A stretch of 63,481 bases of DNA, the filler included, from Octopus bimaculoides (lineage: Eukaryota), in NCBI RefSeq assembly GCF_001194135.2. It is 8 parts of 7 records of this genome, joined end to end, with 100 filler letters (N's around TTAATTAATTAA, not from the genome) between each part and the next. Parts side by side here need not be neighbours in the genome. Positions count along the whole stretch, not along the records: positions 1 to 26,952 come from NC_068995.1; 7 more parts are not named here. The stretch is one strand, 5' to 3'. The notes beneath the pieces are model-generated. The model was given only the letters and a program-made list of their open reading frames with translations, was not told the origin of the DNA and made no database searches. Positions 37 to 24,151 of this stretch are shown here, in pieces. The position numbers and the translations under genes are program-made. Positions within the stretch are counted from its first letter, which is position 1. Each line of letters begins with the position of its first letter.

Positions 37-2784
37 TTTTTAACTTGATGCGAAGCCAAATGTATACTGTCACCCAAATATGCAGTAATCCAGATCTCAC
101 TATGGCTTGCACTGCATTGGAATATTCGCATTTAGCTCAAAATGAATACAAAAGTTAAGCATAATTGACAGGAAGTTATACAAAAAAATTGATTTTACAC
201 GCACAGTGTTATGGCCATTTTGTGAGAATAAAGATGCACACTAATGAAAATGATGACGCTAGGTTGTGTAGTCGTTGATAAGAAATAGAAACTTAGTATT
301 GTAATTGACGTGTCCATTGATACCAGAGTGAAAAGAAAGAAAAGAGGATAAATAAAGTATTATACTCTCTTCTAAATGACTGAAATATAACATTTTGTAA
401 AGTCTATCCGAAATTTATATGAGTATTCTGTAATTTTTTTCTGCTGCTTATAACATGATTTCATTTCTTTCTCCATCAGGATATGTCTAATATACATTGT
501 ATAAGACTCTTATTAAAACTTTGTCTTGTGAAAGGCTGCTATTTTAATTTCGTTAAGGACAGGGTTCTTATTTCATCCACTGAACATTGGTTCTCCTTAA
601 AATGTGGGTTCTTCCTCAGAGGAGAAAGTCCTCCGAGTCGCATTTTTATAGCTTATTTTTTTATCAGTTAAGTCTTTTATGCTTTTTTCTAAAGCTTCAG
701 TGTCTCTATCAGTCTTCTGACTGAGCTCCATCCTTATAAGTGGGTGGGTATTGCTATGACAGGTACTCCTTGATCATTCACTGTTAGTTGTTTTGCTGCT
801 CACCGGCTTGTCTCCACCGGCTTGTGGCTAAGAGAGGAGGATTTTAGGATTCCAGGCTCGCTTCTGATAATGAGAACAGGGCCATTTCATTTGCCGACTC
901 ATGGGTTGTGTCCTAGGACCGACGAGCTACAGGATGATTTTTTGGAGTTGCTTTTGTTTTGTAAAGCTTTCTGTTAAGACAACTTTTAGAGGGGTTTTGT
1001 ACCACTACTCTAAAAGCAGGGACACAATTCTTATAAAGTCATCAAAGTTTGATTCGTCAGGACGGAAATACGATACAGTCGCGTTAAATTAGTCTACATT
1101 TTTTCTTTATTTCTTCGCCTGTTAAATACTCTGTTGACATTGTTATTGGACCAATTTTATTTCTAACAAATTGGGTGATTGATTCAGGACTTGAGAAAAT
1201 TCCACATTGTTTTCGCCGGATCTCTTTGGTGTCTCTGAACTCAAATCTAACGTGGAACCAAGTAAGCAATTTCTGGAAACTATATTTTTTCTAATAATAA
1301 AATGGAAAATTAATATGTTCCAACTATTTCTTCAGCTATCCAGTCTCTAAGTTAACATGTTATCACCGTGAATAGATCCATAGTATAAAGAGATGTGATG
1401 AATATTGTTCTTGTTCCTTCAACAACACCCACTCCACCCACTAAAGAAATTACTTTTCTGTAAAGCTGATAACTTATGTCGTCAAAATATGCAAACTAGT
1501 CAACTATCTGATAATAATGATGATGTATTGAAGAGCTTCGACACTTTTTCTTTTGTATAGATTAAATGTAACAAATATTGCACAAACGATAATATCTACC
1601 TCCATCACATATTTATGAATTGATTTTTATTTGATATAGTAAATTCCTAACAATAGAGTTGGCTATAAATACATGACGGTTCATCCATTCATTTATTCAC
1701 TGCATTTCAGTATCTAACTCAGAGACAGTAAGAATATTTCAAAAGGCTACTTTCGCAAAGCGTTGAATTTTTAGCTTTCCCGCCACTTAAAGTTTATATG
1801 TTTATAAAATACAATGACTGTATGTCAGTATAGCACGCGAAAAAGAGTGAAAATGTGTGTAGCCTATAACGATCCCAGTAATTCAGTAGAATACAAAATA
1901 ACACTTTGGCAAGAAGATACGTCTGTATTCGAGAAAAACCAAGTGTATTGTGTTTTTTATGCGTGATGCGTGTCTCATAAGAAAACGAGGGACCCTGGAT
2001 GTACTTTAATGGTATGGGCAAAAGGAGAGGGGATCACACAGCGGTGATATTGATGAAAAACTAAAAACCGATTATGATAGTCATGATGAACTTTGTCAAT
2101 ACTACATAGCCGCACTAACTGAATTCCGGAAGAATCAAGAATCAGGTACTGATGGGCAGGGCAAACGTGTGTTGTCAAGGATGATTAAGGGTATTGCGTC
2201 GTTAAAAGAAAGGGTTCTTTGTCCGAGTTGACTTCAAGGTCACAAACGAGAGAGAGGCTATAAACGTCACGAAATTGAGTCAGCGTAATTAGGCCAGGAA
2301 AAAATTTACTCAAGAGGAAACATGCAATAAGGTCAATAACACATAGAGAAATGTGGATGATTAGTTTATCCTTCATTAAATCTCATCACAAGGGGATAAA
2401 CACATAAACACATAAACTTTCCACCTCTTACACCTAGCTCCACTTGTCTGGCCGACGCTTGGATACAGCCTTTGTTGTTATGTCAACAAGTGTACTGCAG
2501 TGGTGGTGGTGATGGGGGTTTTTGCAACCCTTGTCTGAGCTTAACTCTTGGACCTTTTATTTGAAGTCCTCAGGTTGTTCTGTAACAACTTGGCTTAAGA
2601 ATTGTCCCCTAAGAGACAGTGGACCCCAGTTTGAGAAGCTAAGATCTAGAGCTTGTGTTCTTTATTGTTTCAGTCTTCGATTCAATCGTTCTGTAATGTA
2701 GTTATATATAATTACAATATAGTAATTGCTAATAATTATCAAAATATTTTGTGTTTTAAAATTAATTTTAAACAATAGGCCTTG

Positions 2785-3158
2785 GGGTAGCTGTGTGGTA
2801 AGAAGCTTGCTTCCCAGCTACATGGTTCCGGATTTAGTCTCACTTCGTGACATATTGGTTGTTTTCTATTGTAGCCTTGGGCCGACCAAAGCCTTGTGAG
2901 TAGAATTGATAGATAGAAACTGAAAGAAGCCCGTCGTGTGTGTGTGTATCTAACTGAATTTGTTCCCCACTGCCGCTTGTCAACCGATGTTGGTGTTTTT
3001 ATGTCCCAGTAATCTAGCCGTTCAGCAATAGACCTTAATGGAATAAGTATAAGGCTGTAAACAAAGCACCAAGGTCGATTCATTCGACTAAATATTTTCA
3101 TGATGGTTACCCAGTATGGCCGCAGTCTAATGACTGAAACCAGTAAAAGAAAAAGAAT
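2785..3158 (+). mobile_element. SINE family A (tRNA-like head, central microsatellite)
   Basis: Head gtggtaagaagcttgcttccc, body ggccgaccaaagccttgtgag, tail gactgaaaccagtaaaaga. Confidence 0.85.
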
Positions 3159-8529: not shown

Positions 8530-9399
8530 GAGTAATGTGTCTTTGTCAGTTGTATCATAATCATTCGCAATATCATCGTCTTTTTCGTTCTCGTCATCAT
8601 ATTCGGCACTATGTATAATCACCGTCATTTATCCTCATCATTATACCTCCACGACCTTCACTGTCGACTGTTTGCGCTTAGTTCTTCCGTAAATTAGGAC
8701 ATCTAATGAACAATTACATTTGTTCTGAATATTTTTTTTTGCTTTTGAAGTATAATATGAATGTTACTTTTATTCGTTTCAATAACACAAACACCAATAT
8801 TCCCGAACGCTTCTCATCATAATTATGGTCCTCATTACTATCATTTCCACAATCTCCTTCACAGTCGCACTAACCAACTTCACTCATCTCATTATTACAA
8901 TATTGATTGCTAGGATGGTTGTTTCTTTTAGTGGAGCGAAGTAACTCTCTCCCTCTTTCTCTTTGTTCCCTCTCTCTCTATCTCTCTCTCTTTCTCTTTC
9001 TTTCACTTGGGGGTCAGTGATTTGAGCAGCGAAGTCAGCAAAGTTAGCTATTCTAGTAAATTTCAAAGAGAAATCAAGGATCAAGTTACAAATTAGGCTT
9101 TAAAATATGAGTAGTTACAAATTTGATTGCTAAACCTGTGTAATATTTTTTAAAAAAGGTGAATTGAAATATTTCATATAGACTTATTTCTATTTTTTAT
9201 CGTAATATTTCACAGAATCATCTTATATGTTAGCTATATATATCTTAGATTATCTACTCAAATTTACTCAATTCAGTAATTCCATTAAACTATTCTTCTG
9301 ATACAATTTTTGTTTATGTAAAATTGTATGTTATATTATTAGTTGTAATCGATTTAGAAATATCATATCAACACAGTGTTCATTTCTTATCTTTTTCAG

Positions 9400-9545
9400 T
9401 ATAGACAACCCTGGTTACCTGCCAGTCATGATGTCGGGCATCCACTGTTTCGGGCGGGAAATGACGCTTTTCGAATGCCATATTGAAACATGGAGACTAG
9501 AAACAAATTGTGACAAGATTGCACATGTTTATTGTTATAAGAAAG
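9400..9545 (+). CDS. SRCR gene exon: C-terminal half of an SRCR domain
   Basis: Acceptor ctttttcag| and donor G|gtaaaa; phase 2 to 1. Translates IDNPGYLPVMMSGIHCFGREMTLFECHIETWRLETNCDKIAHVYCYKK, with the SRCR C-G-E..L..C....C....V.C pattern. Not in the ORF track. Confidence 0.88.
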
Positions 9546-10212
9546 GTAAAATTCAATACTGTGTGAGGGTCTATTCCGTATAAAAACAAAATCTACATTA
9601 GATCTCAGCTGCCATCAGATGTTTTACCTATATATTTGTATTTTAGATATAATTGTCATGTCGTCAAACATCTATTGGACTGTAGAATGTTTCAGAACCT
9701 AAGGTTAGTTATACATGTCTGTCATTATAAATTACATTTTTGCCAGCTGAAGAAACGTTTAACAATCTTATTTTCTTATTTACCTGATAAAAAAAGAATT
9801 CCTCGTAAATTATCATAAATGATTATTATCTTATTTGTTTTTAATTTAATGTTTTTTAGGTGGGGTGTTTCTTTGTTTTCCTCTCCCCACTTTATTCCAA
9901 CATCTTTATAATATTTTCCTTCTTGAGAATAGAAGCAAATTAATAATGTTCGTGTTCATTATTTGCATTTATTTGCTACTGTTTTCTGCTAAATATTTAT
10001 GTAAACTTACATAAAGCTATATTATAGAAATATTCTAATTCTAGGAGTCTTCAGTCGCCTTCTTTCTGTTTTCAATATACGTCTCTGATATAGGGCCGTT
10101 TATACAAACTCATTAATCTTCTTTTTTCTATGTAGTCTGTTTGGTTTTTGTCTTTTTTTTCAACTTCCAAATATTGATTTCAAATGTTGATTTCAAATGT
10201 TGGCACATATGG

Positions 10213-11104: not shown

Positions 11105-12370
11105 TGAGGTGCTATTGGATCTCTTCAATTTCGATCACAGATGCTTTAATTATTTTTTAACTAAACAGTTTGAAACTTCGTATACTGGTATAATGTCTTA
11201 CGCTGAACACGGTTTACTTTTAACATTTTTGACAACATTTCGTATTTTAGAAGTTATTTCGTGTTAAAGATGTCGAATTTTGGCAATTTTAACCAATCAA
11301 CGACGTGTATTCAGCTGAAGAAAGTTACTACTGTTTGCGAAAGTAGTCGAAGAGCAACAACTTCCGAGTCATCTCTATTGAATATCACCACTGTGTTGTA
11401 TTTCATTTTTGTTTACTACCTGTGTTGCATATTACACGTTTTTTTTTTTTTTNNNNNNNNNNNNNNNNNNNNNNNNNNNNNNNNNNNNNNNNNNNNNNNN
11501 NNNNNNNNNNNNNNNNNNNNNNNNNNNNNNNNNNNNNNNNNNNNNNNNNNNNNNNNNNNNNNNNNNNNNNNNNNNNNNNNNNNNNNNNNNNNNNNNNNNN
11601 NNNNNNNNNNNNNNNNNNNNNNNNNNNNNNNNNNNNNNNNNNNNNNNNNNNNNNNNNNNNNNNNNNNNNNNNNNNNNNNNNNNNNNNNNNNNNNNNNNNN
11701 NNNNNNNNNNNNNNNNNNNNNNNNNNNNNNNNNNNNNNNNNNNNNNNNNNNNNNNNNNNNNNNNNNNNNNNNNNNNNNNNNNNNNNNNNNNNNNNNNNNN
11801 NNNNNNNNNNNCCGTGCATTCCTTACACTTTCCCTCTCTACTGGTAGACAGCTACTTCTACACTATCGACTATAAACCAGCGAGCGAACTTGCCACTGCC
11901 ACTACAATTACTGCTGTATCTCTAACTACATGTCGGGCAAACGAATAAATGTGTAAATAATATTTCTTCCTTCTTGGTGTTGATTCTTCGATGCTTACCG
12001 GTTACTCCGACGCGAGAACCCCACCCCAAAAAGAAAGCGTGTAATATGCAACGCAGACTGTAAACAAGAATAAAATAGAACAGAGTGGTGACTTTTAGTA
12101 GAGATGACCCGGAAGTCGTTCTTCTTCGACTGTTATCGCAAACAGCAGTACCTTTCATCAACTGAATACACGTCGATGATTGGTTAAAATTACTCAAATA
12201 CAACTTTTAACACGAAATAGCTTCCAAAATACGAAATTTTGTCAAAAATGTTGAAAGTAAACCGTATTCAGTGTAATTACACAAGTATACGAAGTTTGAA
12301 ACTGTTTAGTTAAAAAAAAGAACATAATTAAAAAATCTGTGAGCAAAACTGAACAGATCCGTACTATCTC
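11105..12370. mobile_element. Foldback-like element with ~340-bp diverged inverted arms
   Basis: 11105-11452 is the reverse complement of about 12028-12370 at roughly 80% identity by eye; the centre is partly a gap. Confidence 0.7.
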
Positions 12371-12677
12371 TGATTGTCAAGCGGCGGTACTGAAAAGCTT
12401 TAAAAAAAGTCATAGAGCGACGAAACGATTCTGCATACACTCGTTTAGTATCAGGGCATTACTGGCTTGTTAGGTTATGTCAAACAGCTGCAGTTGACTG
12501 CAAAGGGAAGGTGAGGGCGAAAAGAGAGATACTGCATTCGAAAATATTTATTGAAAATCGGGTGAGAGTGACGAAAATTACAAGGGTGGATGGGACCACT
12601 CTACGTACATTCCAGTAAATGAGAGAAAGATGGCATCACCACTCAAGAAGATTGCATCATCATCATGATCATCATCA

Positions 12678-13141
12678 TTAACTTTCAGAAATCTCTCGCC
12701 TGGCAGTGCTACCGAGGGGCGCTGCCGTTCAGGATAAACTTTACAAGCACGGAAATGTCGTCAGCCGAGCCTGGCCGAGGTGCATGCAGAGCGACGAAAG
12801 CGTTCTGCACACACTCGTCCGGTGCCCGAGCACTGCTGATCTGTGGGTTTATGTCGAACACCTGTTGTCGTGTGTAGGACGGATCCTGCTATCAGCTGAA
12901 TCCATAGTGACGATTGCCCTGCCGCCCTCCTTTGGCCGAAAGGAGCAGGCAATTATTATTTGTCTAATGGCTGTAGCAAAAGAGGTAGTGTGGTGGACAC
13001 ATTTGAATGGGCTAAAGACAGACACTTTCCTCTTTGGCCAAGCCGTCATAAAATTTTTCAAGTTTCACTTGAAAAGGAAAGTGGGGGTGGAGGGGAAGTG
13101 TTTCTTTCTAACAATTTGTTGAAAAGTGAGTGAATGTCAGA
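12678..13141 (+). mobile_element. Tx1-clade LINE 3' fragment (C-terminal zinc-knuckle region)
   Basis: SLAWQCYRGALP-QDKLYKHG...PRCMQSDESVLHTLVRCP; a more decayed copy lies at about 12410-12610. Confidence 0.8.
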
Positions 13142-13857
13142 NNNNNNNNNNNNNNNNNNNNNNNNNNNNNNNNNNNNNNNNNNNNNNNNNNNNNNNNNNN
13201 NNNNNNNNNNNNNNNNNNNNNNNNNNNNNNNNNNNNNNNNNNNNNNNNNNNNNNNNNNNNNNNNNNNNNNNNNNNNNNNNNNNNNNNNNNNNNNNNNNNN
13301 NNNNNNNNNNNNNNNNNNNNNNNNNNNNNNNNNNNNNNNNNNNNNNNNNNNNNNNNNNNNNNNNNNNNNNNNNNNNNNNNNNNNNNNNNNNNNNNNNNNN
13401 NNNNNNNNNNNNNNNNNNNNNNNNNNNNNNNNNNNNNNNNNNNNNNNNNNNNNNNNNNNNNNNNNNNNNNNNNNNNNNNNNNNNNNNNNNNNNNNNNNNN
13501 NNNNNNNNNNNNNNNNNNNNNNNNNNNNNNNNNNNNNNNNNNNNNNNNNNNNNNNNNNNNNNNNNNNNNNNNNNNNNNNNNNNNNNNNNNNNNNNNNNNN
13601 NNNNNNNNNNNNNNNNNNNNNNNNNNNNNNNNNNNNNNNNNNNNNNNNNNNNNNNNNNNNNNNNNNNNNNNNNNNNNNNNNNNNNNNNNNNNNNNNNNNN
13701 NNNNNNNNNNNNNNNNNNNNNNNNNNNNNNNNNNNNNNNNNNNNNNNNNNNNNNNNNNNNNNNNNNNNNNNNNNNNNNNNNNNNTGAATAATTTCACTGG
13801 AAAAAGATACATAAGTTTTGCCAAGAGTTAGCCTTCTCATCGCAGATCGGTGGCTAT

Positions 13858-13902
13858 CGGACGCTGACGAAGGGAAATAACCCTGAAACTCGAGTCCGTT
13901 CG
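13858..13902 (+). ncRNA. Type I hammerhead ribozyme, canonical core
   Basis: CGGACG-CUGACGA-AGGG(AAAUAA)CCCU-GAAA-C(UCGA)G-UC^CGUUCG. All conserved core bases are present; helix I 6 bp, helix II 4 bp, minimal helix III with a palindromic UCGA loop; predicted cleavage after 13896. Confidence 0.9.
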
Positions 13903-14229
13903 TGCTACAGATCACGATGAGAGGGATAACTTCCCTTGGCAAAACAAACAGGACACAGAAGTGTGTCGATAAGCCAGCTGTAGGAGATGTCCTCCTGGGG
14001 CTAAAAGCAACAGTAACATCCACCCCTAGGCGTCAGCCACATTTAAGTGGCAATATACTTCAATTTTATCATCATTATTATTATTATTATTGTTGTTGTT
14101 GTTGTTATTGTTGTTGTCGTCGTCGTCATTTAGGACGTCGCACAGTATCCAATATCATGAGGTTGTTGATAGAAGATATTGTGTCTACCAGGGATTTGTA
14201 CTGTCTGTCAAGTCATAACAAAGATCTGT

Positions 14230-14430
14230 TCTGTGGTATTTTTAGTGAAAATCTTTTAATCAACCATGTACAAGAGATGGTTTATTTTTTGTCCATAGCA
14301 TCTATAACCTATGATTTCATTTAACAAGCTTGTTAGCGAGGTTAGTGCAAAGCAGAAAAGCAAAGGTGACAGCGAGTCTCCTTGGAATATCTCTCTTCTT
14401 GTGAGTATAAGATAGATTTTAACGACTTGT
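14230..14430 (-). mobile_element. R4/Dong-like (RLE-clade) RT fragment
   Basis: IFQGDSLSPLLFCFAL...KINHLLYMVD. Confidence 0.75.
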
Positions 14431-15094
14431 GGTTCATTTTTTTAGTATAATACGGGTTTTCTTGTTTGCTATTGCGTGGTTTATATATTTTAGTAATGTT
14501 GGAGCTACTTTAGCTGTGTGGATAGAATCTCTTTCGGTTTTAGGCACTTTTCCTCTCGTTATTATTGTTATTATTATTATTATTATTAATATCATCCTCA
14601 TTCCCATCATTGTTATCACTACTAAAAATAATTCGACTCGTGCTGTTTTACTTGCCCTTTTTCATACGTGAAATCCAGTTGTGGTCGACACTACTTTTCT
14701 TTTTATTGTCGATAGAATAACTAAAAGTTGATTTAATCGGCTGCGTCAGTTACCAAAATGGATGATCCTGTACTGAGGATGTATTGCAATCTACATTTCC
14801 TATCTTGCTTCTTTAAGTTTAATCATAAATGAATGAGAGACACAAATTAACTTTCTCCAACCTAAAAATATTGAGATAGCATGCTTATACATAGAACAAT
14901 TATTACCATTTGGTTAATGAGATTCACACTTACTGTAGAGAGTAAGACCTCATACTTTTTTTGATCAAAGATTGCAAAATCTTCCTGTAAATAAAGTTAC
15001 TAAAGAGGTGTGAGGAATCGGAGTTTGTTCCATTGATTATAAATGTCCTTTCTCAAAAATATTTGCAGTATTGACAAATTTATCTTTATTTCAG

Positions 15095-15463
15095 TTCGAC
15101 TTCATGACGGTGTGATGTTACCTGACTATGCAAGCGGCTGGGTAGAAGTTTACGACAAGTTCTATTGGCATGCAGCATGCGCAGATTTTAAAGGCAGTTT
15201 TAATTCAAAGGCCGTACAAGTAGCTTGCAGTGAGCTTGGCTACAAATATGGCTTGCAACTCCCTATTGATTCAAATAGATCGTTTTACATGTCCAACTTT
15301 TTAGAAAAAGTACATTGTGAAGGAAACGAAACATCTGTTGACAACTGCAATTTGACGTTTGGTAGTGTTACGAATTGCGACGTGAATCTTGCCGGATGTG
15401 TCCGGTATTATGAATGTCGAGATGATGTCTTCATTGGTTGTTCTAATACCAAAAAGGTAATGG
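15095..15463 (+). CDS. SRCR gene exon: divergent SRCR domain (8 Cys)
   Basis: Acceptor tttatttcag|; VRLHDG...SGWVEV...AVQVACSELGY...VHCEGNETSVDNC...IGC. Phase-1 donor G|gtacgt at 15464 fits the next exon; an alternative phase-0 donor at 15457 does not. Confidence 0.9.
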
Positions 15464-16143
15464 GTACGTATATTATCGACACACATCTATAATCAGCGAC
15501 TGAATCAATCACCTTTGCTTCTATATATGTTTTTTCGTTTTTAATTCTTTGAGTTCGTCTAAAAAAGAGCTGATACAAATAAGAAACCTTGAAATTTAGA
15601 TAAAAACAAAAGTAAAGAGTTTTGGTGGTACTTCTCCTTCGTCAACTTCCCATTGAAAATCGTCTAATAGCGTATTATTTTCGATAAAATTCGGAACTCA
15701 ATATTGAATTTTTTTCGCGTTGTATTTTGAATGTTTTCACCTTCTTACTAGAGATAAGAAATTATTCCTTTTGAAAGCAGTTTATTCCGTGAAAAATCTG
15801 TTTGGAATAGCATACTCTGTCACTGCACTAAATATTCAAGGGAGTTTCAAATATTACAATTTTCTCCTCCNNNNNNNNNNNNNNNNNNNNNNNNNNNNNN
15901 NNNNNNNNNNNNNNNNNNNNNNNNNNNNNNNNNNNNNNNNNNNNNNNNNNNNNNNNNNNNNNNNNNNNNNNNNNNNNNNNNNNNNNNNNNNNNNNNNNNN
16001 NNNNNNNNNNNNNNNNNNNNNNNNNNNNNNNNNNNNNNNNNNNNNNNNGACGCTTCCTGCATGAAATACAAAATACAATTAAATTAAACTAATTGCAGTT
16101 AGCATTATTAAATTTGTTTTTATTTCACTTCTATGTCATCTAG

Positions 16144-16455
16144 ATCACAAGATATTTCTTGCAAACGAAACCTTCGGAGAATTAATTTTGCAACAATATG
16201 GCCTCAACGCTAGCGTTTGCTCAGCCAACTGGACATCATATGAGCCTAAAGTTATTTGTCGAGAACTGGGATTTAGCAATGGCGTGCTTCTCGGTCCACA
16301 AGATACGTTCAACCGAACTTTCCTGAATATAACTAGGAAAGAAAGATTTAGATGCAACGGGGAAGAACTGAAACTTAAAGATTGTGAAACATACACAGAA
16401 GATGTTTGTAGAATGCCTTACGCTCACACATTAATCCTCTGTTATAAAAAAAATG
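16144..16455 (+). CDS. SRCR gene exon: group A-type SRCR domain (6 Cys)
   Basis: Acceptor catctag|; DHKIFLANETFGELIL...SVCSANW...KVICRELGF...FRCNGEELKLKDC...VC...ILCYKKN. Ends at G|gcaagt; phase 1-1. Confidence 0.88.
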
Positions 16456-16624
16456 GCAAGTATACCAATAAATGCTTACATATGTATTTCTATTTACATG
16501 TACGTGTAATGTTTATAATGTTGCTGTCGGACAATTATATGCCGTAAATCAACCATTAATATATGATAAGAACTTAATCATTTTCCAGGCTGGTTTAATA
16601 TAATTACTTCTAATTTTGGCACAA

Positions 16625-16793: not shown

Positions 16794-17112
16794 TTAGATT
16801 GGTTTTACGTAATACCAGTAATTCATCCTCAGTATTCTTTTATTCTTTTACTTGTTTCAGTCATTTGATTGCGGCCATGCTGGAACACCGCCTTAAAGGG
16901 TTTTAGTCGAATAAATCGACCCTAGGACTTATTTTTTGTAAGCCTAGTACTTATTCTCTCGGTTCTTTTGCCGAACTGCTAAGTTACAGGAACGTAAATA
17001 CACCAACATCGGTTGTCAAGCGATGGTCGGGAGACAAACACAGACACAAAGGCACACACATAGATATACACACACACACACACACACACACACNNNNNNN
17101 NNNATATATATA

Positions 17113-17304
17113 TACTTGGAATTTACAAAAAACAAAAGACGAAAACAGGTGTATAAACAACAAACCGCTGTATTAGTTTAACACTCGGGAAGGTGAGAAA
17201 GTCTTTTACGTTTCGAGCCTACGCTCTTCAACAGAAAGGAGCACGAGAAAATAAACTGAGAGAGAATTAAAAAAAGCTTTAGTGGCTAGCGGTCGATCAT
17301 GGCG
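17113..17304 (-). mobile_element. ~200-bp non-coding repeat carrying an HHR-like motif (copy A)
   Basis: Homologous to 61763-61978; inserted in the microsatellite of a SINE. Confidence 0.7.
17203..17238 (-). ncRNA. Minimal hammerhead-like motif, A6-to-U variant
   Basis: CUUU-CUGUUGA-A-GAGC(GUAG)GCUC-GAAA-C-GUA^AAAG. Confidence 0.6.
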
Positions 17305-18339
17305 ATAAGCTTCTTACAGTTTCTGTCTACCATGTTCACTCACAAGGCTTTGGTCGGCCCGAGGTTATACTAGAAGACACTTGCCCAAAGTGTCACGCAG
17401 TTGGACTGAACCCGGAACCATGTGGTTGGGAAGCAAACTTCTTACCACACAGCCACGCCTCCGTTTATCTATTGTTAACAATATCCAATTAAGCTAATTG
17501 TGTTACACGTTTGGCTCTTGTTAATACATCGCATTGACACTTAAGAAGAATGGGAAATAATGCATCAAACAAAACAAAGTGTCTCGGACATGGTGTGAGC
17601 TCAGATATTATCAGCCACGATATCGTATCTGATTTATAACTCGTCAAATTGGACATTTTTCAACTATATTAACGAAACATTTTTCAAACATATCTTAGAA
17701 CATCAGTTCTAAATATTGCTAAATATTTAGCTGTGATGGTATTGTCTGTGTATGGCGTGTGCTTCTGGATTTAAATTATCGCTCAAAATATTTTAGATGT
17801 ACGAAAATGCTATAAGAGTTAAATATAAGTCAAATATTTATGTTTGTAAACATTTCTTTTTCTCAACATTTCTGATAGCCTTGATTGATCTTTCTTGTGG
17901 CTAATAACTGCACCTTCTCCCTTTGTCATAAGCTACAAGCAAAACTTTGATTCCTCTTTCTGGACATTTCATTTCAATTTTGGTAATAATTCTCATGATA
18001 AACAGAATACAATCCCACTAATATTTTTCTAAAAATTACTATTTTTACCTATAATTTTACATGTTATGTTGCACCATTGACTTGCCTTTGAGTCTTTATA
18101 TGAAGAGTAAGTTTCCAGAAATACCCACATGATGACCCACTATGTTATACGTCATTACCACCAGACCTACATTATGTATTTTTCTTTAAATATATATATA
18201 AAGATCGGATTATCTTGGTAAGTATCAAAATGATTCCTTACCAAAAAGGTGATTTTTTGAAAGGTTGACATGAAAACGCTAAAAGATCATGTGCTACACA
18301 AAGACATTCTTTGTACACCAGATAGTAGTCTTACAAGAA

Positions 18340-18584: not shown

Positions 18585-18662
18585 AATGTATTTGTTCTTT
18601 TATAAGACATTTGTTTTCTATTTAATGTATCTGTTCTTTTATAAGACATTTGTTTTCTATTT
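18585..18662 (+). repeat. 39-bp tandem duplication
   Basis: Two units with one mismatch, immediately upstream of the exon acceptor. Confidence 0.9.
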
Positions 18663-18668
18663 CACTAG

Positions 18669-19001
18669 ACTTGAATATAAGACTTCATGGAGGAGGGAGA
18701 AATTATGGTCGCATAGAAATATTATATAATGGTAAATGGGGAACGATATGCAACACAACTTGGACGCATATTAACTCAATGGTCATCTGTAAGCAATTAG
18801 GATTTGTAGATGGTACACCTTTTGTGTCTGGCCCACTAAGTCCACTCCCTGCAACGAAAGAAACTCCAGTTTATATGGAAAAGATTTGGTGCAGACAGGA
18901 AGACACTCATATCTGGTCTTGTCCAAACAATGGATGGGAAAGAGTCGACTCTAAATGTTTAGATCATTCTCGAGATGCTGCCGTTTATTGCTTTTTTGCA
19001 G
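18669..19001 (+). CDS. SRCR gene exon: canonical group A SRCR domain (6 Cys)
   Basis: Acceptor tttcactag| and donor G|gtaagt; IRLHGGGRNYGRIEILYNGKWGTICNTTW...VICKQLGF...IWC...WSC...GW...C.DHSRDAAVYC; phase 1-1. Confidence 0.95.
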
Positions 19002-19232
19002 GTAAGTACTGAAGTAAATGCTAAATTATTACATATGTAGGAGGATATCAAGTTCATATTTAGGTCTTTAAATGTTTTTCCGTAATCGAATATTCAAATT
19101 AACTTGATCAATTATACTTTAGGCTAGATATTATCAATGCACATAGGACTTGACAAAAAGCTAATCTCATATGTTTTTAGGTTTTTTTTAAACATATGAG
19201 GGCATGGATACATACAACATATGAAGAGAATT

Positions 19233-20658: not shown

Positions 20659-22241
20659 CACTGGTCAACAAAATGAAACTTTTTTTAATCATAAGAGTTG
20701 CTGATTGACTTTTTTTGGTTAATTTTTGATGTTGTTTACGAATCTGCAGTCCGATTTCCTCTATCAGGTCATATTTTCATGTTAATGATACCTGCTGTTT
20801 TAACTCATAGGATACGTAAAGCATGTCTATATCAAGTATAATGAATACAAGGTACGATAATTTCATGGCTTTTTATTGTACAAAATTAAAATTATTGTGT
20901 ACAAATAAGTTAGAATACACTCGAATGCATAACAACTTAAAATCTTTGGGATTTGGACTTTCTACGGTGTTTTGTCTCAGGTTCATTCCTGTATAACATA
21001 CAACAGTAGTCAGCTAACATTCTTGCATCCCAAAATCCTTGATATCGTTGTTCCATCGATGCAATATCTTGATGAAAGCGTTCCCCTTGCTCATCAGACA
21101 CTGCTCCAAGGTTCTCTGCAAAAAAGTCCAGACGTGAATCAAGGAAATGGACTTTTAGTGACATCCGACAGCCCATTGCAGCGTAGGAGTCTAGAAGACA
21201 TTTCGCTCCATTCCTAAACTCTAGAGATCTCTTGTTGCCTAGGAAATTTTCACAAAACCATTTGAAGGATTCCCAGACTTTAAGCTCAATCTTATCCAGT
21301 GCTGTGAGGAAGTGGTTGTCCTTTAAGAGTTCTTTTATCTGCGGAGCTATGTATACGTCCTCCTTCAGTTTTGCCTCAGTGATCTTTGGAAATTTGGCCT
21401 TCACATATTCAAAACCTTTTGAGCTTTTCCGGGCAAGTGTCTTCATGAATTGTTTCATGAGGTCAAGCTTTATGTGAAAAGGGGGAAGGAGAACATTTTC
21501 TGGGTTTAAAAGTGGCTTATTCTGGATGCTATAAACTCTTGGCTCATGATTTTTGCAAAGGCCACTCTGATTGCACATAGTGTTTGTTAGTTGCACGACT
21601 GTCCCATAGGCATAACAAGCAACAATATTTCATGAACCCAGATTGCATTCCCATCAACATTCCAATCACCTTCCAGTCTCCACATATTTTCCAGCTGTAG
21701 TTTGTATACTTTATGGCATTGATGAGTACTTGCATGTTTTCATAATACTCCTTCATGTGCACTGAATGTCCTATGGGAATGGATGGTTTCTTATTGCCAT
21801 TGTGTAGTAGTACTGCTTTGAGGCTTCCCTTAGATGAATCAATGAATAAGCGCCATTCAGCTGGAACATGCTCTCGGAACAAACACAGACATGACAAAAT
21901 ATATCAGGTTTGTTCTTGCAATGCCTTGACATCCTGAGTAGAATTTGATGATGATGATGACTTGGCACCTTAAACAGAAAGTAAAATTTAGGAAAAGAAA
22001 AGATTATGAAAACATAAAATTAGAAAAGGAATACAAATAGTTATAAAACAGAAGTCAGACTTTACCTGTATAAGACGTTTACGTGTAGCGATACTGCTGA
22101 TGGGAGTTATATACCTCTCTTATCTCATCAGAAAAACTGTGCCTGATAGAAGGAAACCGATTACATTTTTGAAATCTGCGGACAAAACTACATATAAAAC
22201 ACCATATAATATCTCTGAGGAAAATTGGCTGTTGACCAGTG
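20659..22241 (-). mobile_element. Chapaev3-like (CMC) DNA transposon with both ends, internally deleted
   Basis: 12-bp TIRs CACTGGTCAACA and TTA on both flanks (3-bp TSD). Transposase pieces CKNKPDIFCHVC, EWRLFIDSSK, ICGD.KV, FHIKLDLMKQF and SDEQGERFHQDI. Confidence 0.85.
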
Positions 22242-22269: not shown

Positions 22270-22935
22270 TCTACCGAAACCTGCATCAACCCTATTGAAG
22301 ACACAACATACAAATTCAAATCAGAACAGATTTTTACTGTAAAAATTCACTTTACATGTATACCCTATCAAATGTCAAAGATGTAATGAAGATTACACAG
22401 GTCAAACAAAGTTTGCTCTAAGAAATAGACTGGCCATTCACCGACAACAAGTACGAGACCCCAGTACTAGACAGATTTCACTGACTGAACACATAGACAT
22501 ATGTGCTAAAAATAAGTCTCCCAAATTCCAGGTCTTCCCATTTTACCTATGCTCAGCGAATAGCACAGAAGGAGCACGGATAAACAAAGAAAATATTTTC
22601 ATACAAAATACAAACCAAGCCTTAACAAACGTTAACAGAGTACATACGCAAATGACTACTCACACACAAAACTTATTCTGCCACTTATCATGAGGAACCT
22701 ACACAGCTAACAACCTACACTTTATCCACAGCACTACATACAAACCTGCCCCCTCTCCCACCAGACAGATTAAATTTGGAGTGCCTTGATTATAACTAAA
22801 CATGTTCAAGGCAACTGCGACTTAAGCCATGTTTTTTCTGTTTTAACCTTTTGAAAAGCAGTGTAAACTGTAAAACCACTGAAAGCTTTAAACATATTTT
22901 TAAAACTATTGTAACTATTCTCAGTGCATTTTCAA
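22270..22935 (+). mobile_element. Penelope GIY-YIG endonuclease end plus 3' pLTR-like region
   Basis: YPIKCQRCNEDYTGQTKFALRNRLAIHRQQ...TEHI...KE...YKPSLN (frameshifted); 22812-22935 has an inverted homolog at 20350-20480. Confidence 0.8.
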
Positions 22936-23013: not shown

Positions 23014-23449
23014 NNNNNNNNNNNNNNNNNNNNNNNNNNNNNNNNNNNNNNNNNNNNNNNNNNNNNNNNNNNNNNNNNNNNNNNNNNNNNNNNNNNNNNN
23101 NNNNNNNNNNNNNNNNNNNNNNNNNNNNNNNNNNNNNNNNNNNNNNNNNNNNNNNNNNNNNNNNNNNNNNNNNNNNNNNNNNNNNNNNNNNNNNNNNNNN
23201 NNNNNNNNNNNNNNNNNNNNNNNNNNNNNNNNNNNNNNNNNNNNNNNNNNNNNNNNNNNNNNNNNNNNNNNNNNNNNNNNNNNNNNNNNNNNNNNNNNNN
23301 NNNNNNNNNNNNNNNNNNNNNNNNNNNNNNNNNNNNNNNNNNNNNNNNNNNNNNNNNNNNNNNNNNNNNNNNNNNNNNNNNNNNNNNNNNNNNNNNNNNN
23401 NNNNNNNNNNNNNNNNNNNNNNNNNNNNNNNNNNNNNNNNNNNNNNNNN

Positions 23450-23730
23450 TGAGTGGATTTGGTAGACGGAAACTGAAAGAAGCCCGTCGTATATATGTAT
23501 ATATATATATGTATGTGTGTATGTTTGTATGTGTGTGTTTGTCCCCCCAACATCGCTTGACAACCGATGCTGGTGTGTTTATGTCCCCGTAACTTAGCGG
23601 TTTGGCAAAATAGATCGATAGAATAAGTACTAGGCTTCTAAAGAATAAGTCCTGGGGTCGATTTGCTCGACTAAAAGGCGGTGCTCCAGCATGGCCACAG
23701 TCAAAAGACTGAAACAAGTAAAAGAGTAAA
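23450..23730 (+). mobile_element. SINE family A (5' end in gap)
   Basis: Close match to the other family A copies. Confidence 0.9.
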
Positions 23731-24151
23731 ATATATATATATATATATATATATAAAACGGGTAACTAATTTTTCTGTGCCTGTTATGGCTTGTGACACT
23801 TGTTCTGAGATGACTCACACCCAGCTGCATTATAATATGGTTCTAGACAGATGCCGGAATCATGGAAGAGTTATAAAAATAAAGAGTGATGGTGAGCGAC
23901 ATCCTATCAGGTCATCCCATAAGTTCTGTCCGAATTTTGAATAAAGAAAACAAGTGATCAAATTCATTCATCTTTCCTCTCCCTACTTCGCTCTGTCCAC
24001 ATTCAAGTATGTGTTATATTACTTATTCTTACTTATTCGCTTTCAACCCCATGTGCTAAATTTTACGTCTTCGTTGTGAGAAAGTTTATGCATAAATTCA
24101 TTTAAAATTTATTGACTGAAATGCATTGATTATAATAATTCTGTTTTTCAG

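What the first reader, a model, noticed from the sequence alone, without database searches (positions are those of the whole stretch)
13815..13945. Intact type I hammerhead ribozyme at the tip of a 131-nt rod-like RNA
Seen: a canonical core (CUGACGA, GAAA, GUC after 13896). Helix I extends through stems GUGGC/GCUAC, GAUC/GAUC, UCUCAUCG/CGAUGAGA, CCU/GGG, AGUUA/UAACU and GUUUUGCCAAG/CUUGGCAAAAC, about 42 bp in total. The stems are interrupted by bulges and G-U pairs, as expected of a selected RNA fold rather than a DNA palindrome. A UAU x U internal loop sits 6 bp from the core. Established: natural type I HHRs dock loop II onto a helix I bulge, and minimal HHRs with palindromic helix III loops occur in Penelope pLTRs and in metazoan retrozymes that make circRNAs. 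Inference: this is an active retrozyme-like or pLTR module. A tandem copy could be hidden in the adjacent 643-nt gap.
Basis: partly seen in the sequence, partly recalled or inferred. Interest (0 to 1): 0.9.

Follow-up and report, generated by a model that had tools for sequence, protein, structure and literature searches.

The report
Canonical hammerhead ribozyme in octopus repeat
The sequence really contains a complete type I hammerhead self-cleaving ribozyme motif at the tip of a long hairpin, but it is an ordinary member of the well-known animal "retrozyme/satellite" hammerhead class, seen here as a single copy of a dispersed octopus repeat; its activity is untested.

Summary
Window 13815-13945 (+) folds into a 131-nt hairpin (-63.5 kcal/mol, z = -8.8). 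Its tip carries every defining element of a type I hammerhead: CUGACGA, a 4-bp helix II with loop AAAUAA, GAA, a palindromic helix III (ACUCGAGU), and GUC with cleavage after 13896. Helix I has 6 bp, then a UAU x U internal loop, then 36 more pairs (42 in all).

A generic descriptor finds this one site in the window and none in 2000 shuffles. A covariance model built from 25 independent metagenomic type I hammerheads matches it gaplessly (48.4 bits, E 1e-12). Rfam's Hammerhead_1 gives only 17 bits against a cutoff of 34.

The architecture is that of the canonical metazoan hammerhead (Schistosoma and retrozyme type), not the minimal Penelope pLTR type. One non-consensus feature is an A10.1-U11.1 pair.

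The element extends at least 74 nt further downstream. It has at least one paralogue in Octopus bimaculoides, so it is a dispersed repeat.

Only one copy is visible. A tandem partner in the adjacent gap, self-cleavage, circRNA formation and stem covariation could not be tested. It probably lies in sense orientation in an intron of an SRCR-repeat gene.

Verdict: real, and a new member of a known kind. Interest is modest.

The parts
13815..13945 (+). Whole 131-nt hairpin: a type I hammerhead with a 42-bp helix I
   Evidence: RNA MFE -63.5 kcal/mol, z -8.8. The hammerhead fold evaluates at -57.5 kcal/mol, with 42 helix I pairs.
13815..13854 (+). Distal 5' arm of helix I, with stems of 11, 5, 11, 4 and 5 bp separated by small loops
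   Evidence: Pair table.
13855..13857 (+). Loop 1, 5' side (UAU), 6 bp from the core
   Evidence: The same position reads UAC or UAU in 22 of the 25 comparator hammerheads.
13858..13863 (+). Proximal helix I, 5' strand (CGGACG)
   Evidence: all 6 pairs are standard.
13864..13870 (+). Catalytic box C3-A9 (CUGACGA)
13871..13884 (+). Helix II (AGGG/CCCU, with A10.1-U11.1 at its base) capped by loop 2, AAAUAA
   Evidence: An A-U pair at 10.1/11.1 occurs in only 1 of 25 comparators (L062).
13885..13887 (+). Catalytic box G12 A13 A14
13888..13895 (+). Helix III: A15.1-U16.1 and C15.2-G16.2 around a UCGA loop. The 8-mer ACUCGAGU is palindromic.
   Evidence: all four palindrome pairs of the Rfam model are met; a two-copy cofold forms an 8-bp intermolecular helix III.
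13896..13897 (+). Predicted cleavage site: C17 at 13896, scissile bond between 13896 and 13897
   Evidence: Position follows from the core alignment. Cleavage itself was not tested.
13897..13902 (+). Proximal helix I, 3' strand (CGUUCG)
13903..13903 (+). Loop 1, 3' side (single U)
   Evidence: This column is an invariant U in all 25 comparators.
13904..13945 (+). Distal 3' arm of helix I
13946..14019 (+). Downstream part of the same repeat, shared with an Octopus bimaculoides paralogue
   Evidence: P0001 aa 1-25 match the minus-strand translation of 14019..13945 at 96%. P0001 aa 25-54 match 13942..13853 at 83% in another frame, which implies a 5-nt indel at 13943-13947.
13142..13784 (.). Assembly gap (643 N) ending 30 nt upstream of the hairpin. 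It hides the 5' boundary of the element and any tandem copy.

Best explanation
This is a genuine, structurally complete canonical metazoan type I hammerhead ribozyme, of the Schistosoma and retrozyme type. It sits in a dispersed repeat of an octopus genome, probably Octopus bimaculoides. It is most likely a solitary (monomeric) copy of a non-LTR retrozyme-like element.

Proposed mechanism, by analogy with published retrozymes:
1. When the plus strand is transcribed (probably as part of an SRCR-gene intron), helix II and its AAAUAA loop dock onto the UAU x U internal loop of helix I. The RNA then cuts itself after C13896, leaving a 2',3'-cyclic phosphate and a 5'-OH.
2. In tandem copies of the family, two such cuts release a unit-length, highly self-paired RNA.
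3. A tRNA ligase circularises that RNA, and a retroelement reverse transcriptase copies it back into the genome.
4. At this locus a single visible copy can give only one cut, so this copy is probably a dead-end insertion.

Shown here: the motif, the hairpin, membership of the canonical architecture, and repeat status. Inferred: cleavage, the retrozyme life cycle and the intronic location.
For: 1. All core nucleotides and all three helices are present.
2. A generic descriptor gives 1 hit in the window and 0 in 2000 shuffles.
3. A covariance model built from 25 independent metagenomic hammerheads matches 13851-13907 gaplessly at 48.4 bits, E 1.2e-12, with all 16 pairs standard. Those 25 show compensatory changes in 14 of 16 pairs. 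Of the 12 comparator loci checked against Rfam (11 of them in the model), 11 scored 31-56 bits on RF00163.
4. The features not fixed by my search pattern also agree with the comparators: a 6-bp helix I, a UAY x U loop, a closing stem, a 4-bp helix II and a palindromic loop 3. They also match the published definition of canonical metazoan type I hammerheads: helix I 6 bp, helix II 4 bp, helix III 1-2 bp with a 2-4 nt palindromic loop (PMC4209133).
5. Rfam aligns the full 45-position model to the site, including the exact 14-nt helix II insert.
6. The nearest-neighbour energy penalty of the hammerhead fold relative to the MFE (6.0 kcal/mol) equals that of the commonest comparator family (5.9). 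So it does not argue against activity.
7. The repeat extends to 14019 and has an O. bimaculoides paralogue.
8. Extended helix I and solitary copies are normal for such elements. One comparator family has about 22 bp of helix I. L031 is a solitary ribozyme at the tip of a roughly 170-nt hairpin in an 8.7-kb contig.
9. Retrozyme monomers dispersed in genomes, many of them in introns, are documented (bioRxiv 10.64898/2026.07.22.740005).
10. A PLE-type GIY-YIG remnant lies at 22343-22690. Such elements therefore exist in this genome, which fits the reported co-occurrence of retrozymes and PLEs.
11. The GC content of the element is 0.49.
Against: 1. Rfam RF00163 is below its gathering score (17 against 34 bits) and gives no hit at window scale.
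2. The 10.1-11.1 pair is A-U instead of the highly conserved G-C. Only L062 among the 25 comparators shares this. G10.1 N7 is a metal ligand (PMC7151607), so the rate may be reduced.
3. No tandem repeat and no second copy is visible. The defining retrozyme arrangement is therefore unproven.
4. My comparators were retrieved with a pattern derived from this ribozyme (19 fixed nt), so part of the 48 bits follows from that choice.
5. The only paralogue is known as a translation. It needs at least 4 substitutions in the 9 nt spanning helix III and the cleavage site. Family members may be decaying rather than constrained.
6. There is no expression, cleavage or circRNA evidence.
Confidence: 0.58

Rival explanations
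1. The hairpin is part of a Penelope-like element pseudo-LTR, either a solo pLTR or the 3' end of a PLE whose body lies in the gap.
For: PLEs carry hammerheads in their pLTRs near the 3' end (PMC4209133, PMC8557442). Retrozymes appear to derive from pLTRs (bioRxiv 10.64898/2026.07.22.740005). A GIY-YIG remnant at 22343-22690 shows that PLEs are present in this genome. The 643-nt gap hides the upstream sequence.
Against: Metazoan PLE hammerheads are minimal variants with a long helix II, a short helix I, no helix III and no loop-loop contacts (PMC4209133, PMC6155905). This one is canonical. The ORF just before the gap carries a LINE-type zf-RVT domain, not a PLE RT plus GIY-YIG. The GIY-YIG remnant is 8.4 kb away, beyond three host exons, and has no sequence similarity to the element. 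A 643-nt gap cannot hold a PLE ORF.
Confidence: 0.1
2. The ribozyme belongs to another kind of non-autonomous or autonomous retroelement. Two candidates are a SINE-like element, as in Schistosoma Sm-alpha, and the 3' untranslated tail of the LINE whose ORF ends at 13122 on the same strand.
For: A LINE ORF with a zf-RVT domain (12682-13119, plus strand) ends 20 nt before the gap, in the same orientation as the ribozyme. The element is dispersed, extends beyond the hairpin and ends near a microsatellite at 14066-14117. Sm-alpha shows that canonical type I hammerheads can ride on SINE-like elements (PMC6155905).
Against: Hammerheads have not been described in LINE 3' UTRs in the papers read here. 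No tRNA-like part was found. The paralogue gene model gives no link to a LINE. The gap prevents any test.
Confidence: 0.18
3. A domesticated intronic ribozyme: the copy is retained because self-cleavage of the host pre-mRNA regulates the SRCR-repeat gene, as proposed for the amniote intronic hammerheads HH9 and HH10.
For: SRCR exons lie on the same strand on both sides, at 9302-9580 and at 15043-15489, 16083-16544 and 18626-19009. The ribozyme is therefore probably sense-intronic. The motif is intact.
Against: It is a member of a repeat family. There is no evidence of conservation at this locus in other species. About 40% of retrozyme copies fall in introns by chance of insertion (bioRxiv 10.64898/2026.07.22.740005). 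That the four exons belong to one gene is itself an inference.
Confidence: 0.04
4. A hammerhead by descent but catalytically dead: a decaying relic whose core happens still to read correctly. Alternatively, a chance motif in the loop of a DNA palindrome.
For: The pair at 10.1-11.1 is A-U. The Rfam score is sub-threshold. Both strands fold. The paralogue differs heavily around the cleavage site.
Against: Pure chance is excluded for practical purposes: 0 hits in 2000 shuffles and E 1e-12. All 11 invariant core nucleotides, all 12 pairs of helices I (proximal 6 bp), II and III, and the loop 1 and loop 2 nucleotides are intact. That is not expected of an old relic. A10.1 keeps the purine N7, and compensated changes at 10.1/11.1 occur in cricket satellite hammerheads (PMC2837043).
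Confidence: 0.1

Closest known systems
Canonical metazoan type I hammerhead ribozyme (Schistosoma mansoni Sm-alpha type; Rfam RF00163 Hammerhead_1)
   Same: Same core, including N7 = C as in the Rfam consensus. Same 6-bp helix I followed by a UAY x U internal loop. Same 4-bp helix II with a 6-nt A-rich loop (AAAUA motif), the exact 14-nt helix II insert, GAAAC, a palindromic helix III and a GUC site (PMC4209133, PMC6155905).
   Different: A10.1-U11.1 instead of G-C. The helix I and III sequences differ from the Rfam seed, so the score is 17 bits against a cutoff of 34. Helix I continues for 42 bp.
Non-LTR retrozymes of animals (coral Acropora millepora, mussel, axolotl; Cervera & de la Pena 2020, PMC7229834)
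   Same: Canonical type I hammerhead in a short non-coding repeat with GC near or below 50%. The RNA is highly self-paired with the ribozyme at one end. Helix III has 2 bp plus a tetraloop, as in invertebrate retrozymes that cleave as monomers. PLEs co-occur in the genome.
   Different: No tandem array is visible here; a single copy sits next to a gap. Unit length and boundaries are unknown. No circRNA or cleavage data. The family sequence is unrelated to any comparator.
Minimal hammerheads of Penelope-like element pLTRs (Cervera & de la Pena 2014, PMC4209133)
   Same: Type I topology, association with retroelements, and a palindromic 15.2-16.2 region allowing dimers.
   Different: PLE motifs have a 6-8 bp helix II with a bulged base after A9, a short helix I, no helix III loop and no loop 1 / loop 2 contacts. 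This motif has the canonical sizes and loops, and no flanking PLE ORF.
Newt and salamander satellite 2 hammerheads (dimer-dependent)
   Same: Type I with a weak helix III and a palindromic loop. A double-hammerhead with an extended intermolecular helix III is predicted here as well.
   Different: The amphibian helix III has a single base pair and needs dimers. This one has two pairs plus a tetraloop, like the invertebrate ribozymes reported to cleave as monomers (PMC7229834).
Intronic hammerheads of amniotes (HH9 and HH10; Rfam RF02275, RF02277)
   Same: Schistosoma-like type I motif, probably lying in sense orientation inside an intron.
   Different: Those are single-copy and conserved across species. 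This one is a copy of a repeat family, and no Rfam match to those models was reported.

Membership tests
Hammerhead ribozyme, type I (structural definition) | Conserved core C3 U4 G5 A6 N7 G8 A9 / G12 A13 A14 / A15.1-U16.1 / H17 | tested here: met
   CUGACGA 13864-13870; GAA 13885-13887; A13888 pairs with U13895; C17 at 13896.
Hammerhead ribozyme, type I (structural definition) | Three helices around the core, with helices II and III capped and helix I open | tested here: met
   Helix II 4 bp, helix III 2 bp, helix I 6 + 36 bp. A generic descriptor gives 1 hit against 0 in 2000 shuffles.
Hammerhead ribozyme, type I (structural definition) | Site-specific self-cleavage 3' of H17 | not testable with these tools
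   Needs in vitro transcription and a cleavage assay.
Rfam RF00163 Hammerhead_1 | Bit score at or above the curated gathering threshold (34 bits) | tested here: not met
   No hit at gathering. 17.0 bits and E 0.047 only in a 65-nt search, although the full model 1-45 aligned with no non-standard pair. Bona fide-looking comparators L046 (31.2 bits) and L026 (32.8 bits) also fall short, and L062 is not listed at all.
Canonical metazoan type I hammerhead with loop 1 / loop 2 tertiary contact | Helix I of 6 bp followed by an internal loop (UAY on the 5' side, U on the 3' side) and a closing stem | tested here: met
   CGGACG/CGUUCG, UAU x U, then UGGC/GCUA. The U and A of the 5' side are nearly invariant in the 25 comparators and the 3' U is invariant.
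Canonical metazoan type I hammerhead with loop 1 / loop 2 tertiary contact | Helix II of 4 bp capped by a 6-nt loop carrying the AAAUA motif | tested here: met
   AGGG-AAAUAA-CCCU. AAAUA was part of my retrieval pattern, so its agreement with the comparators follows from that choice. Agreement with the published Schistosoma loop rests on my own knowledge of that sequence.
Canonical metazoan type I hammerhead with loop 1 / loop 2 tertiary contact | Short helix III (1-2 bp) with a small palindromic loop | tested here: met
   AC-UCGA-GU. A dimer cofold gives an 8-bp helix III. Definition taken from PMC4209133.
Canonical metazoan type I hammerhead with loop 1 / loop 2 tertiary contact | Highly conserved G10.1-C11.1 pair | tested here: not met
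   A13871-U13884. Among the comparators the counts are 23 G-C, 1 G-U and 1 A-U. The pair is conserved rather than strictly defining, and compensated variants occur in cricket satellites (PMC2837043).
Non-LTR retrozyme (PMC7229834) | Head-to-tail tandem repeats of about 150-450 bp, each with one type I hammerhead | tested here: inconclusive
   No tandem or second copy in the readable sequence. The 643-nt gap ends 30 nt upstream. Monomeric derivatives are documented (bioRxiv 10.64898/2026.07.22.740005).
Non-LTR retrozyme (PMC7229834) | Multi-copy, non-coding, GC below about 50% | tested here: inconclusive
   One paralogue was found, and only as a protein translation. GC is 0.49 for 13815-14019. 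Copy number is unknown.
Non-LTR retrozyme (PMC7229834) | Expressed as unit-length linear and circular RNA | not testable with these tools
   No transcriptome data available.
Penelope-like element pLTR | Direct repeats flanking an ORF with a PLE-type RT and a GIY-YIG endonuclease | tested here: not met
   The ORFs near the element are a LINE-type zf-RVT (12682-13119) and an RVT_1 fragment on the other strand (14259-14441). The only GIY-YIG lies at 22343-22690, which is 8.4 kb away. The gap leaves 643 nt unread.
Penelope-like element pLTR | Minimal hammerhead architecture: long helix II with a bulge, short helix I, no helix III loop, no tertiary-contact loops | tested here: not met
   Helix sizes and loops are canonical.

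The most novel reading that the evidence does not exclude
This could be a cephalopod-specific retrozyme-type family in which the hammerhead is clamped by an unusually long, nearly perfect 42-bp helix I. The released RNA would then be a double-stranded rod.

In an animal with very active A-to-I editing and small-RNA pathways, such a rod could be an ADAR or Dicer substrate. As a sense-intronic copy, it could cut the SRCR-gene pre-mRNA. In that case the copy would have a host-level role rather than being a dead insertion.
Probability: 0.08. Interest if true: 0.5.

Novelty: new member of a known kind. Interest (0 to 1): 0.27.

Why it matters
If the motif cleaves, it adds an octopus family to the list of animal genomes that carry canonical type I hammerheads in retrozyme-like repeats. 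It also gives a natural A10.1-U11.1 variant with a very long helix I that standard Rfam annotation misses (17 bits). Counts of hammerheads in cephalopod genomes based on Rfam thresholds may therefore be underestimates. It opens no new question about ribozymes or retroelements. Its main practical value is as a seed for a genome-wide family search, and as a reminder that sense-intronic self-cleaving motifs can sit in host genes.

Tried and rejected
- Rfam at gathering threshold over the window, and at E<=10 over 215 nt: no hammerhead hit. The only match was a chance MIR950 hit at E 2.7 on the minus strand. The Hammerhead_1 alignment appears only in a 65-nt search.
- Orthologous or paralogous DNA by exact-protein look-up of window ORFs and of P0001: nothing on record.
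- Protein-space searches with translations across the element:
  - Minus frame: one real paralogue, P0001.
  - Exhaustive phmmer search: added only P0002 and P0003. On inspection these are unrelated repeat or low-complexity proteins, so I rejected them.
  - A chimeric query of the two plus-strand frames: no candidates.
- Exact 26-mer of the core in prokaryotic genomes and viral contigs: 0 hits.
- BLAST of the element against the 72 fetched loci: no similarity beyond chance 12-17-mers. The comparators are analogues of the motif, not relatives of the repeat.
- Back-translation of the paralogue to test helix III covariation: ambiguous. The most parsimonious solutions need 4 changes. One keeps a palindromic loop (CCGG) but mispairs 15.2-16.2. 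A fully compatible solution needs 5. No conclusion drawn.
- Search for the 30 nt upstream of the hairpin in the downstream sequence, as a tandem-unit test: no match.
- Bacterial promoter and terminator scan and tRNA scan: irrelevant or empty.
- The 6 kcal/mol deficit of the hammerhead fold relative to the MFE was considered as evidence against activity. I rejected it because the commonest comparator family shows the same deficit.
Full report
**1. What is in the sequence**

Window 13815-13945 (+) reads GUUUUGCCAAGAGUUAGCCUUCUCAUCGCAGAUCGGUGGC-UAU-CGGACG-CUGACGA-AGGG-AAAUAA-CCCU-GAA-AC-UCGA-GU-C | CGUUCG-U-GCUAC...CUUGGCAAAAC.

- The C3-A9 box is at 13864-13870.
- Helix II with its loop is at 13871-13884.
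- G12-A14 is at 13885-13887.
- The palindromic helix III (ACUCGAGU) is at 13888-13895.
- C17 is at 13896.
- The proximal helix I is 6 bp (13858-13863 / 13897-13902).
- The UAU x U internal loop follows.
- Five further stems bring helix I to 42 pairs, 3 of them G-U.

As RNA the plus strand folds at -63.5 kcal/mol, against -33 +/- 3.5 for shuffles (z = -8.8). The minus strand folds less well, at -56.1.

**2. Is it more than chance?**

- A generic type I descriptor finds exactly one site in the window (13864, plus strand). It finds none in 2000 dinucleotide-preserving shuffles of the window, both strands. The descriptor asks for CUGANGA, a 4-bp helix II with a 4-8 nt loop, GAAA, one further helix III pair, UH and a 6-bp helix I.
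- Rfam is less generous. There is no family at gathering threshold over the window and nothing at E<=10 over 215 nt.
- Only when 65 nt are searched alone does RF00163 Hammerhead_1 align. It gives 17.0 bits against a cutoff of 34, E 0.047, over the full model 1-45.
- That alignment includes the consensus N7 = C, the exact 14-nt helix II insert and all four palindrome pairs of helix III.
- The low score comes from helix I and III letters that differ from the seed, and from helix II being an unscored insert in that model.

**3. Independent comparators**

One scan of metagenome contigs with CTGANGA-N4-5-AAATA-N4-5-GAAAC-N4-GTC returned 71 loci.

- Most carry textbook type I hammerheads, for example ..UCGC-UAC-ACAGUG-CUGACGA-GUCC-CAAAUA-GGAC-GAA-AC-AGCU-GU-C-CACUGU-U-GCGA.
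- Twenty-five distinct ones align without gaps (A1).
- They show compensatory changes in 14 of 16 pairs, with 96% of cells paired against 26-49% when the partners are slid.
- Of 12 loci checked against Rfam, 11 score 31-56 bits on RF00163. L062, the only one with an A10.1-U11.1 pair like this window, is missed by Rfam altogether.
- A covariance model built from these 25, without the window sequence, finds one site in the window: 13851-13907 (+), 48.4 bits, E 1.2e-12, gapless, all 16 pairs standard. The next best hit scores 10 bits.

Part of that score follows from how the comparators were chosen, because 19 positions were fixed by my pattern. The features the pattern did not fix all agree:

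- 6 of 6 helix I pairs and 4 of 4 helix II pairs;
- a 4-bp closing stem;
- U-A at the 5' side and U at the 3' side of loop 1, both (near-)invariant in the comparators;
- a palindromic loop 3.

This is the published definition of the canonical metazoan type I hammerhead. Helix I has 6 bp and helix II 4 bp, interacting through conserved loop nucleotides. Helix III has 1-2 bp capped by a 2-4 nt palindromic loop (PMC4209133).

**4. Intactness and likely activity**

Every invariant core nucleotide is present. The one departure is A10.1-U11.1 in place of the highly conserved G10.1-C11.1.

- Among the comparators the counts are 23 G-C, 1 G-U and 1 A-U.
- G10.1 N7 is a metal ligand (PMC7151607). An adenine keeps N7.
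- Compensated changes at this pair occur in cricket satellite hammerheads (PMC2837043).
- A rate penalty is still possible.

The nearest-neighbour model prefers an alternative centre (CGGAC/GUCCG) by 6.0 kcal/mol. The commonest comparator family shows the same deficit, 5.9, so this says nothing against activity.

Two copies cofold into a double hammerhead with an 8-bp intermolecular helix III (-42.7 against 2 x -19.1 kcal/mol). A coral retrozyme hammerhead cleaved efficiently as a single genomic copy, and invertebrate hammerheads are described there as having this kind of helix III, 2 bp plus a tetraloop (PMC7229834). Monomer activity is therefore plausible. None of this was measured.

**5. 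What element is it?**

The repeat is larger than the hairpin.

- The only database protein resembling a translation across it is a 54-aa Octopus bimaculoides gene model (UniRef A0A0L8IHK6).
- Its residues 1-25 match the minus-strand translation of 14019..13945 at 96%.
- Its residues 25-54 match 13942..13853 at 83% in another frame. This implies a 5-nt indel at the end of the 3' arm.

So a paralogue shares at least 13853-14019, and the window comes from an octopus, probably O. bimaculoides. Its DNA could not be fetched.

The amino-acid differences cluster in two places: the 3' arm (IV to TS) and helix III with the cleavage site (GLE to VSG). The second needs at least 4 substitutions in 9 nt. 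Back-translation is too ambiguous to tell covariation from decay.

No second copy, tandem unit or partial copy exists in the readable window. The 643-nt gap ends 30 nt upstream of the hairpin.

**6. Retrozyme versus pLTR**

Canonical hammerheads with loop-loop contacts are the hallmark of animal non-LTR retrozymes. These are 150-450 bp tandem repeats with low GC, expressed as highly self-paired 170-400 nt circRNAs (PMC7229834).

Metazoan PLE pLTRs carry minimal variants without helix III or the tertiary contacts (PMC4209133, PMC6155905). Several observations point away from a pLTR.

- The motif here is of the canonical kind.
- The ORFs beside it are a LINE-type zf-RVT (12682-13119, plus strand) and an RT fragment on the other strand (14259-14441). 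Neither is a PLE RT plus GIY-YIG.
- A borderline GIY-YIG domain with the VY-I-C--C---Y-GQT motif lies at 22343-22690. It is 8.4 kb away, beyond host exons, and unrelated in sequence.
- That remnant does show that PLE-type elements, the proposed autonomous partners of retrozymes, exist in this genome.

Long helix I extensions and solitary copies are not unusual.

- One comparator family has about 22 bp of conserved helix I.
- One of its members (L031) is a solitary ribozyme at the tip of a roughly 170-nt hairpin in an 8.7-kb contig.
- Most comparator contigs hold one ribozyme. A few hold two, either in tandem at 260-515 nt or inverted.
- Dispersed retrozyme monomers, about 40% of them intronic, are documented in frogs (bioRxiv 10.64898/2026.07.22.740005).

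**7. Genomic context**

SRCR-domain exons lie on the plus strand at 9302-9580, 15043-15489, 16083-16544 and 18626-19009. If they belong to one gene, the ribozyme is sense-intronic and would be transcribed with the pre-mRNA. The region is otherwise full of transposon debris and microsatellites.

**8. Verdict**

The best reading is a solitary copy of a retrozyme-like octopus repeat (confidence about 0.6).

The alternatives are:
- a pLTR;
- a SINE-like element or LINE tail;
- a domesticated intronic ribozyme;
- a dead relic.

Activity, tandem arrangement, circRNA formation and stem covariation remain untested with the tools at hand.

The class is well known. Thousands of copies occur in corals, mussels, schistosomes and amphibians, and 235 Rfam hits were reported in the giant squid (PMC6962438). 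This is therefore a new member of a known kind. It has two minor points of interest: the A10.1-U11.1 pair and the 42-bp helix I. Because of its divergent helix sequences, it is also invisible to Rfam's threshold.

Noticed in passing
window 9302-9580, 15043-15489, 16083-16544, 18626-19009 (+): Four SRCR-domain exons on the plus strand (Pfam PF00530, E from 1.5e-4 to 3.7e-23). They probably belong to one multi-SRCR gene whose intron holds the hammerhead.
   Followed up: partly
window 22343-22690 (+): An ORF with a borderline GIY-YIG domain (22.1 bits, cutoff 22.6) and the motif VYPIKCQRCNEDYTGQTKFALRNRLAIHRQQV. It looks like a Penelope-like element endonuclease remnant. No RT and no hammerhead was found next to it before the gap at 23014.
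   Followed up: partly
window 12682-13119 (+) and 12414-12490: A LINE C-terminal ORF with a weak zf-RVT match ends 20 nt before the gap that precedes the hammerhead. A 73%-identical fragment of the same region lies 374 nt upstream.
   Followed up: partly
window 14259-14441 (-): A reverse-transcriptase fragment (..FQGDSLSPLLF..HLLYMVD; weak RVT_1 match) on the opposite strand, 300 nt beyond the repeat and its microsatellite.
   Followed up: partly
window 2784-3154, 16838-17459, 23450-23731: Copies, in both orientations, of a dispersed SINE-like repeat containing ..CAGTCATTTGATTGCGGCCATGCTGGAACACCGCCTT.. and ending in (CA)n or (TA)n runs (inverted pairs I2, I3, I5, I7, I12-I14 and direct pair D9).
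   Followed up: no
window 11198-11448 and 12028-12276: A long inverted repeat (177 nt at 82% plus 71 nt at 92%) flanking the gap at 11453-11811. It looks like a foldback or MITE-like element.
   Followed up: no
window 20940-21629 and 21547-21903 (-): Two adjacent ORFs of 230 and 119 aa with no credible Pfam match. They resemble transposase-derived proteins by eye only.
   Followed up: no
L031 3365-3553; also L004, L008, L019, L043, L051: A metagenome family (sample ERZ1740055) of type I hammerheads with about 22 bp of conserved helix I and a shared downstream segment. In L031 an inverted copy of that segment makes a roughly 170-nt hairpin with the ribozyme at its tip. A sub-threshold tRNA-like hit lies 130 nt downstream.
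   Followed up: partly
L062 27-83 (-): A canonical-looking type I hammerhead with an A10.1-U11.1 pair (AGGA/UCCU), like the octopus one. It is not reported by Rfam RF00163 even at E<=10. The Rfam model seems to under-call this variant.
   Followed up: partly
L005, L035, L040, L056, L068, L004: Contigs with two hammerheads, either inverted pairs 230-450 nt apart or direct repeats 260-515 nt apart. These are the arrangements described for PLE-associated copies and retrozymes.
   Followed up: no
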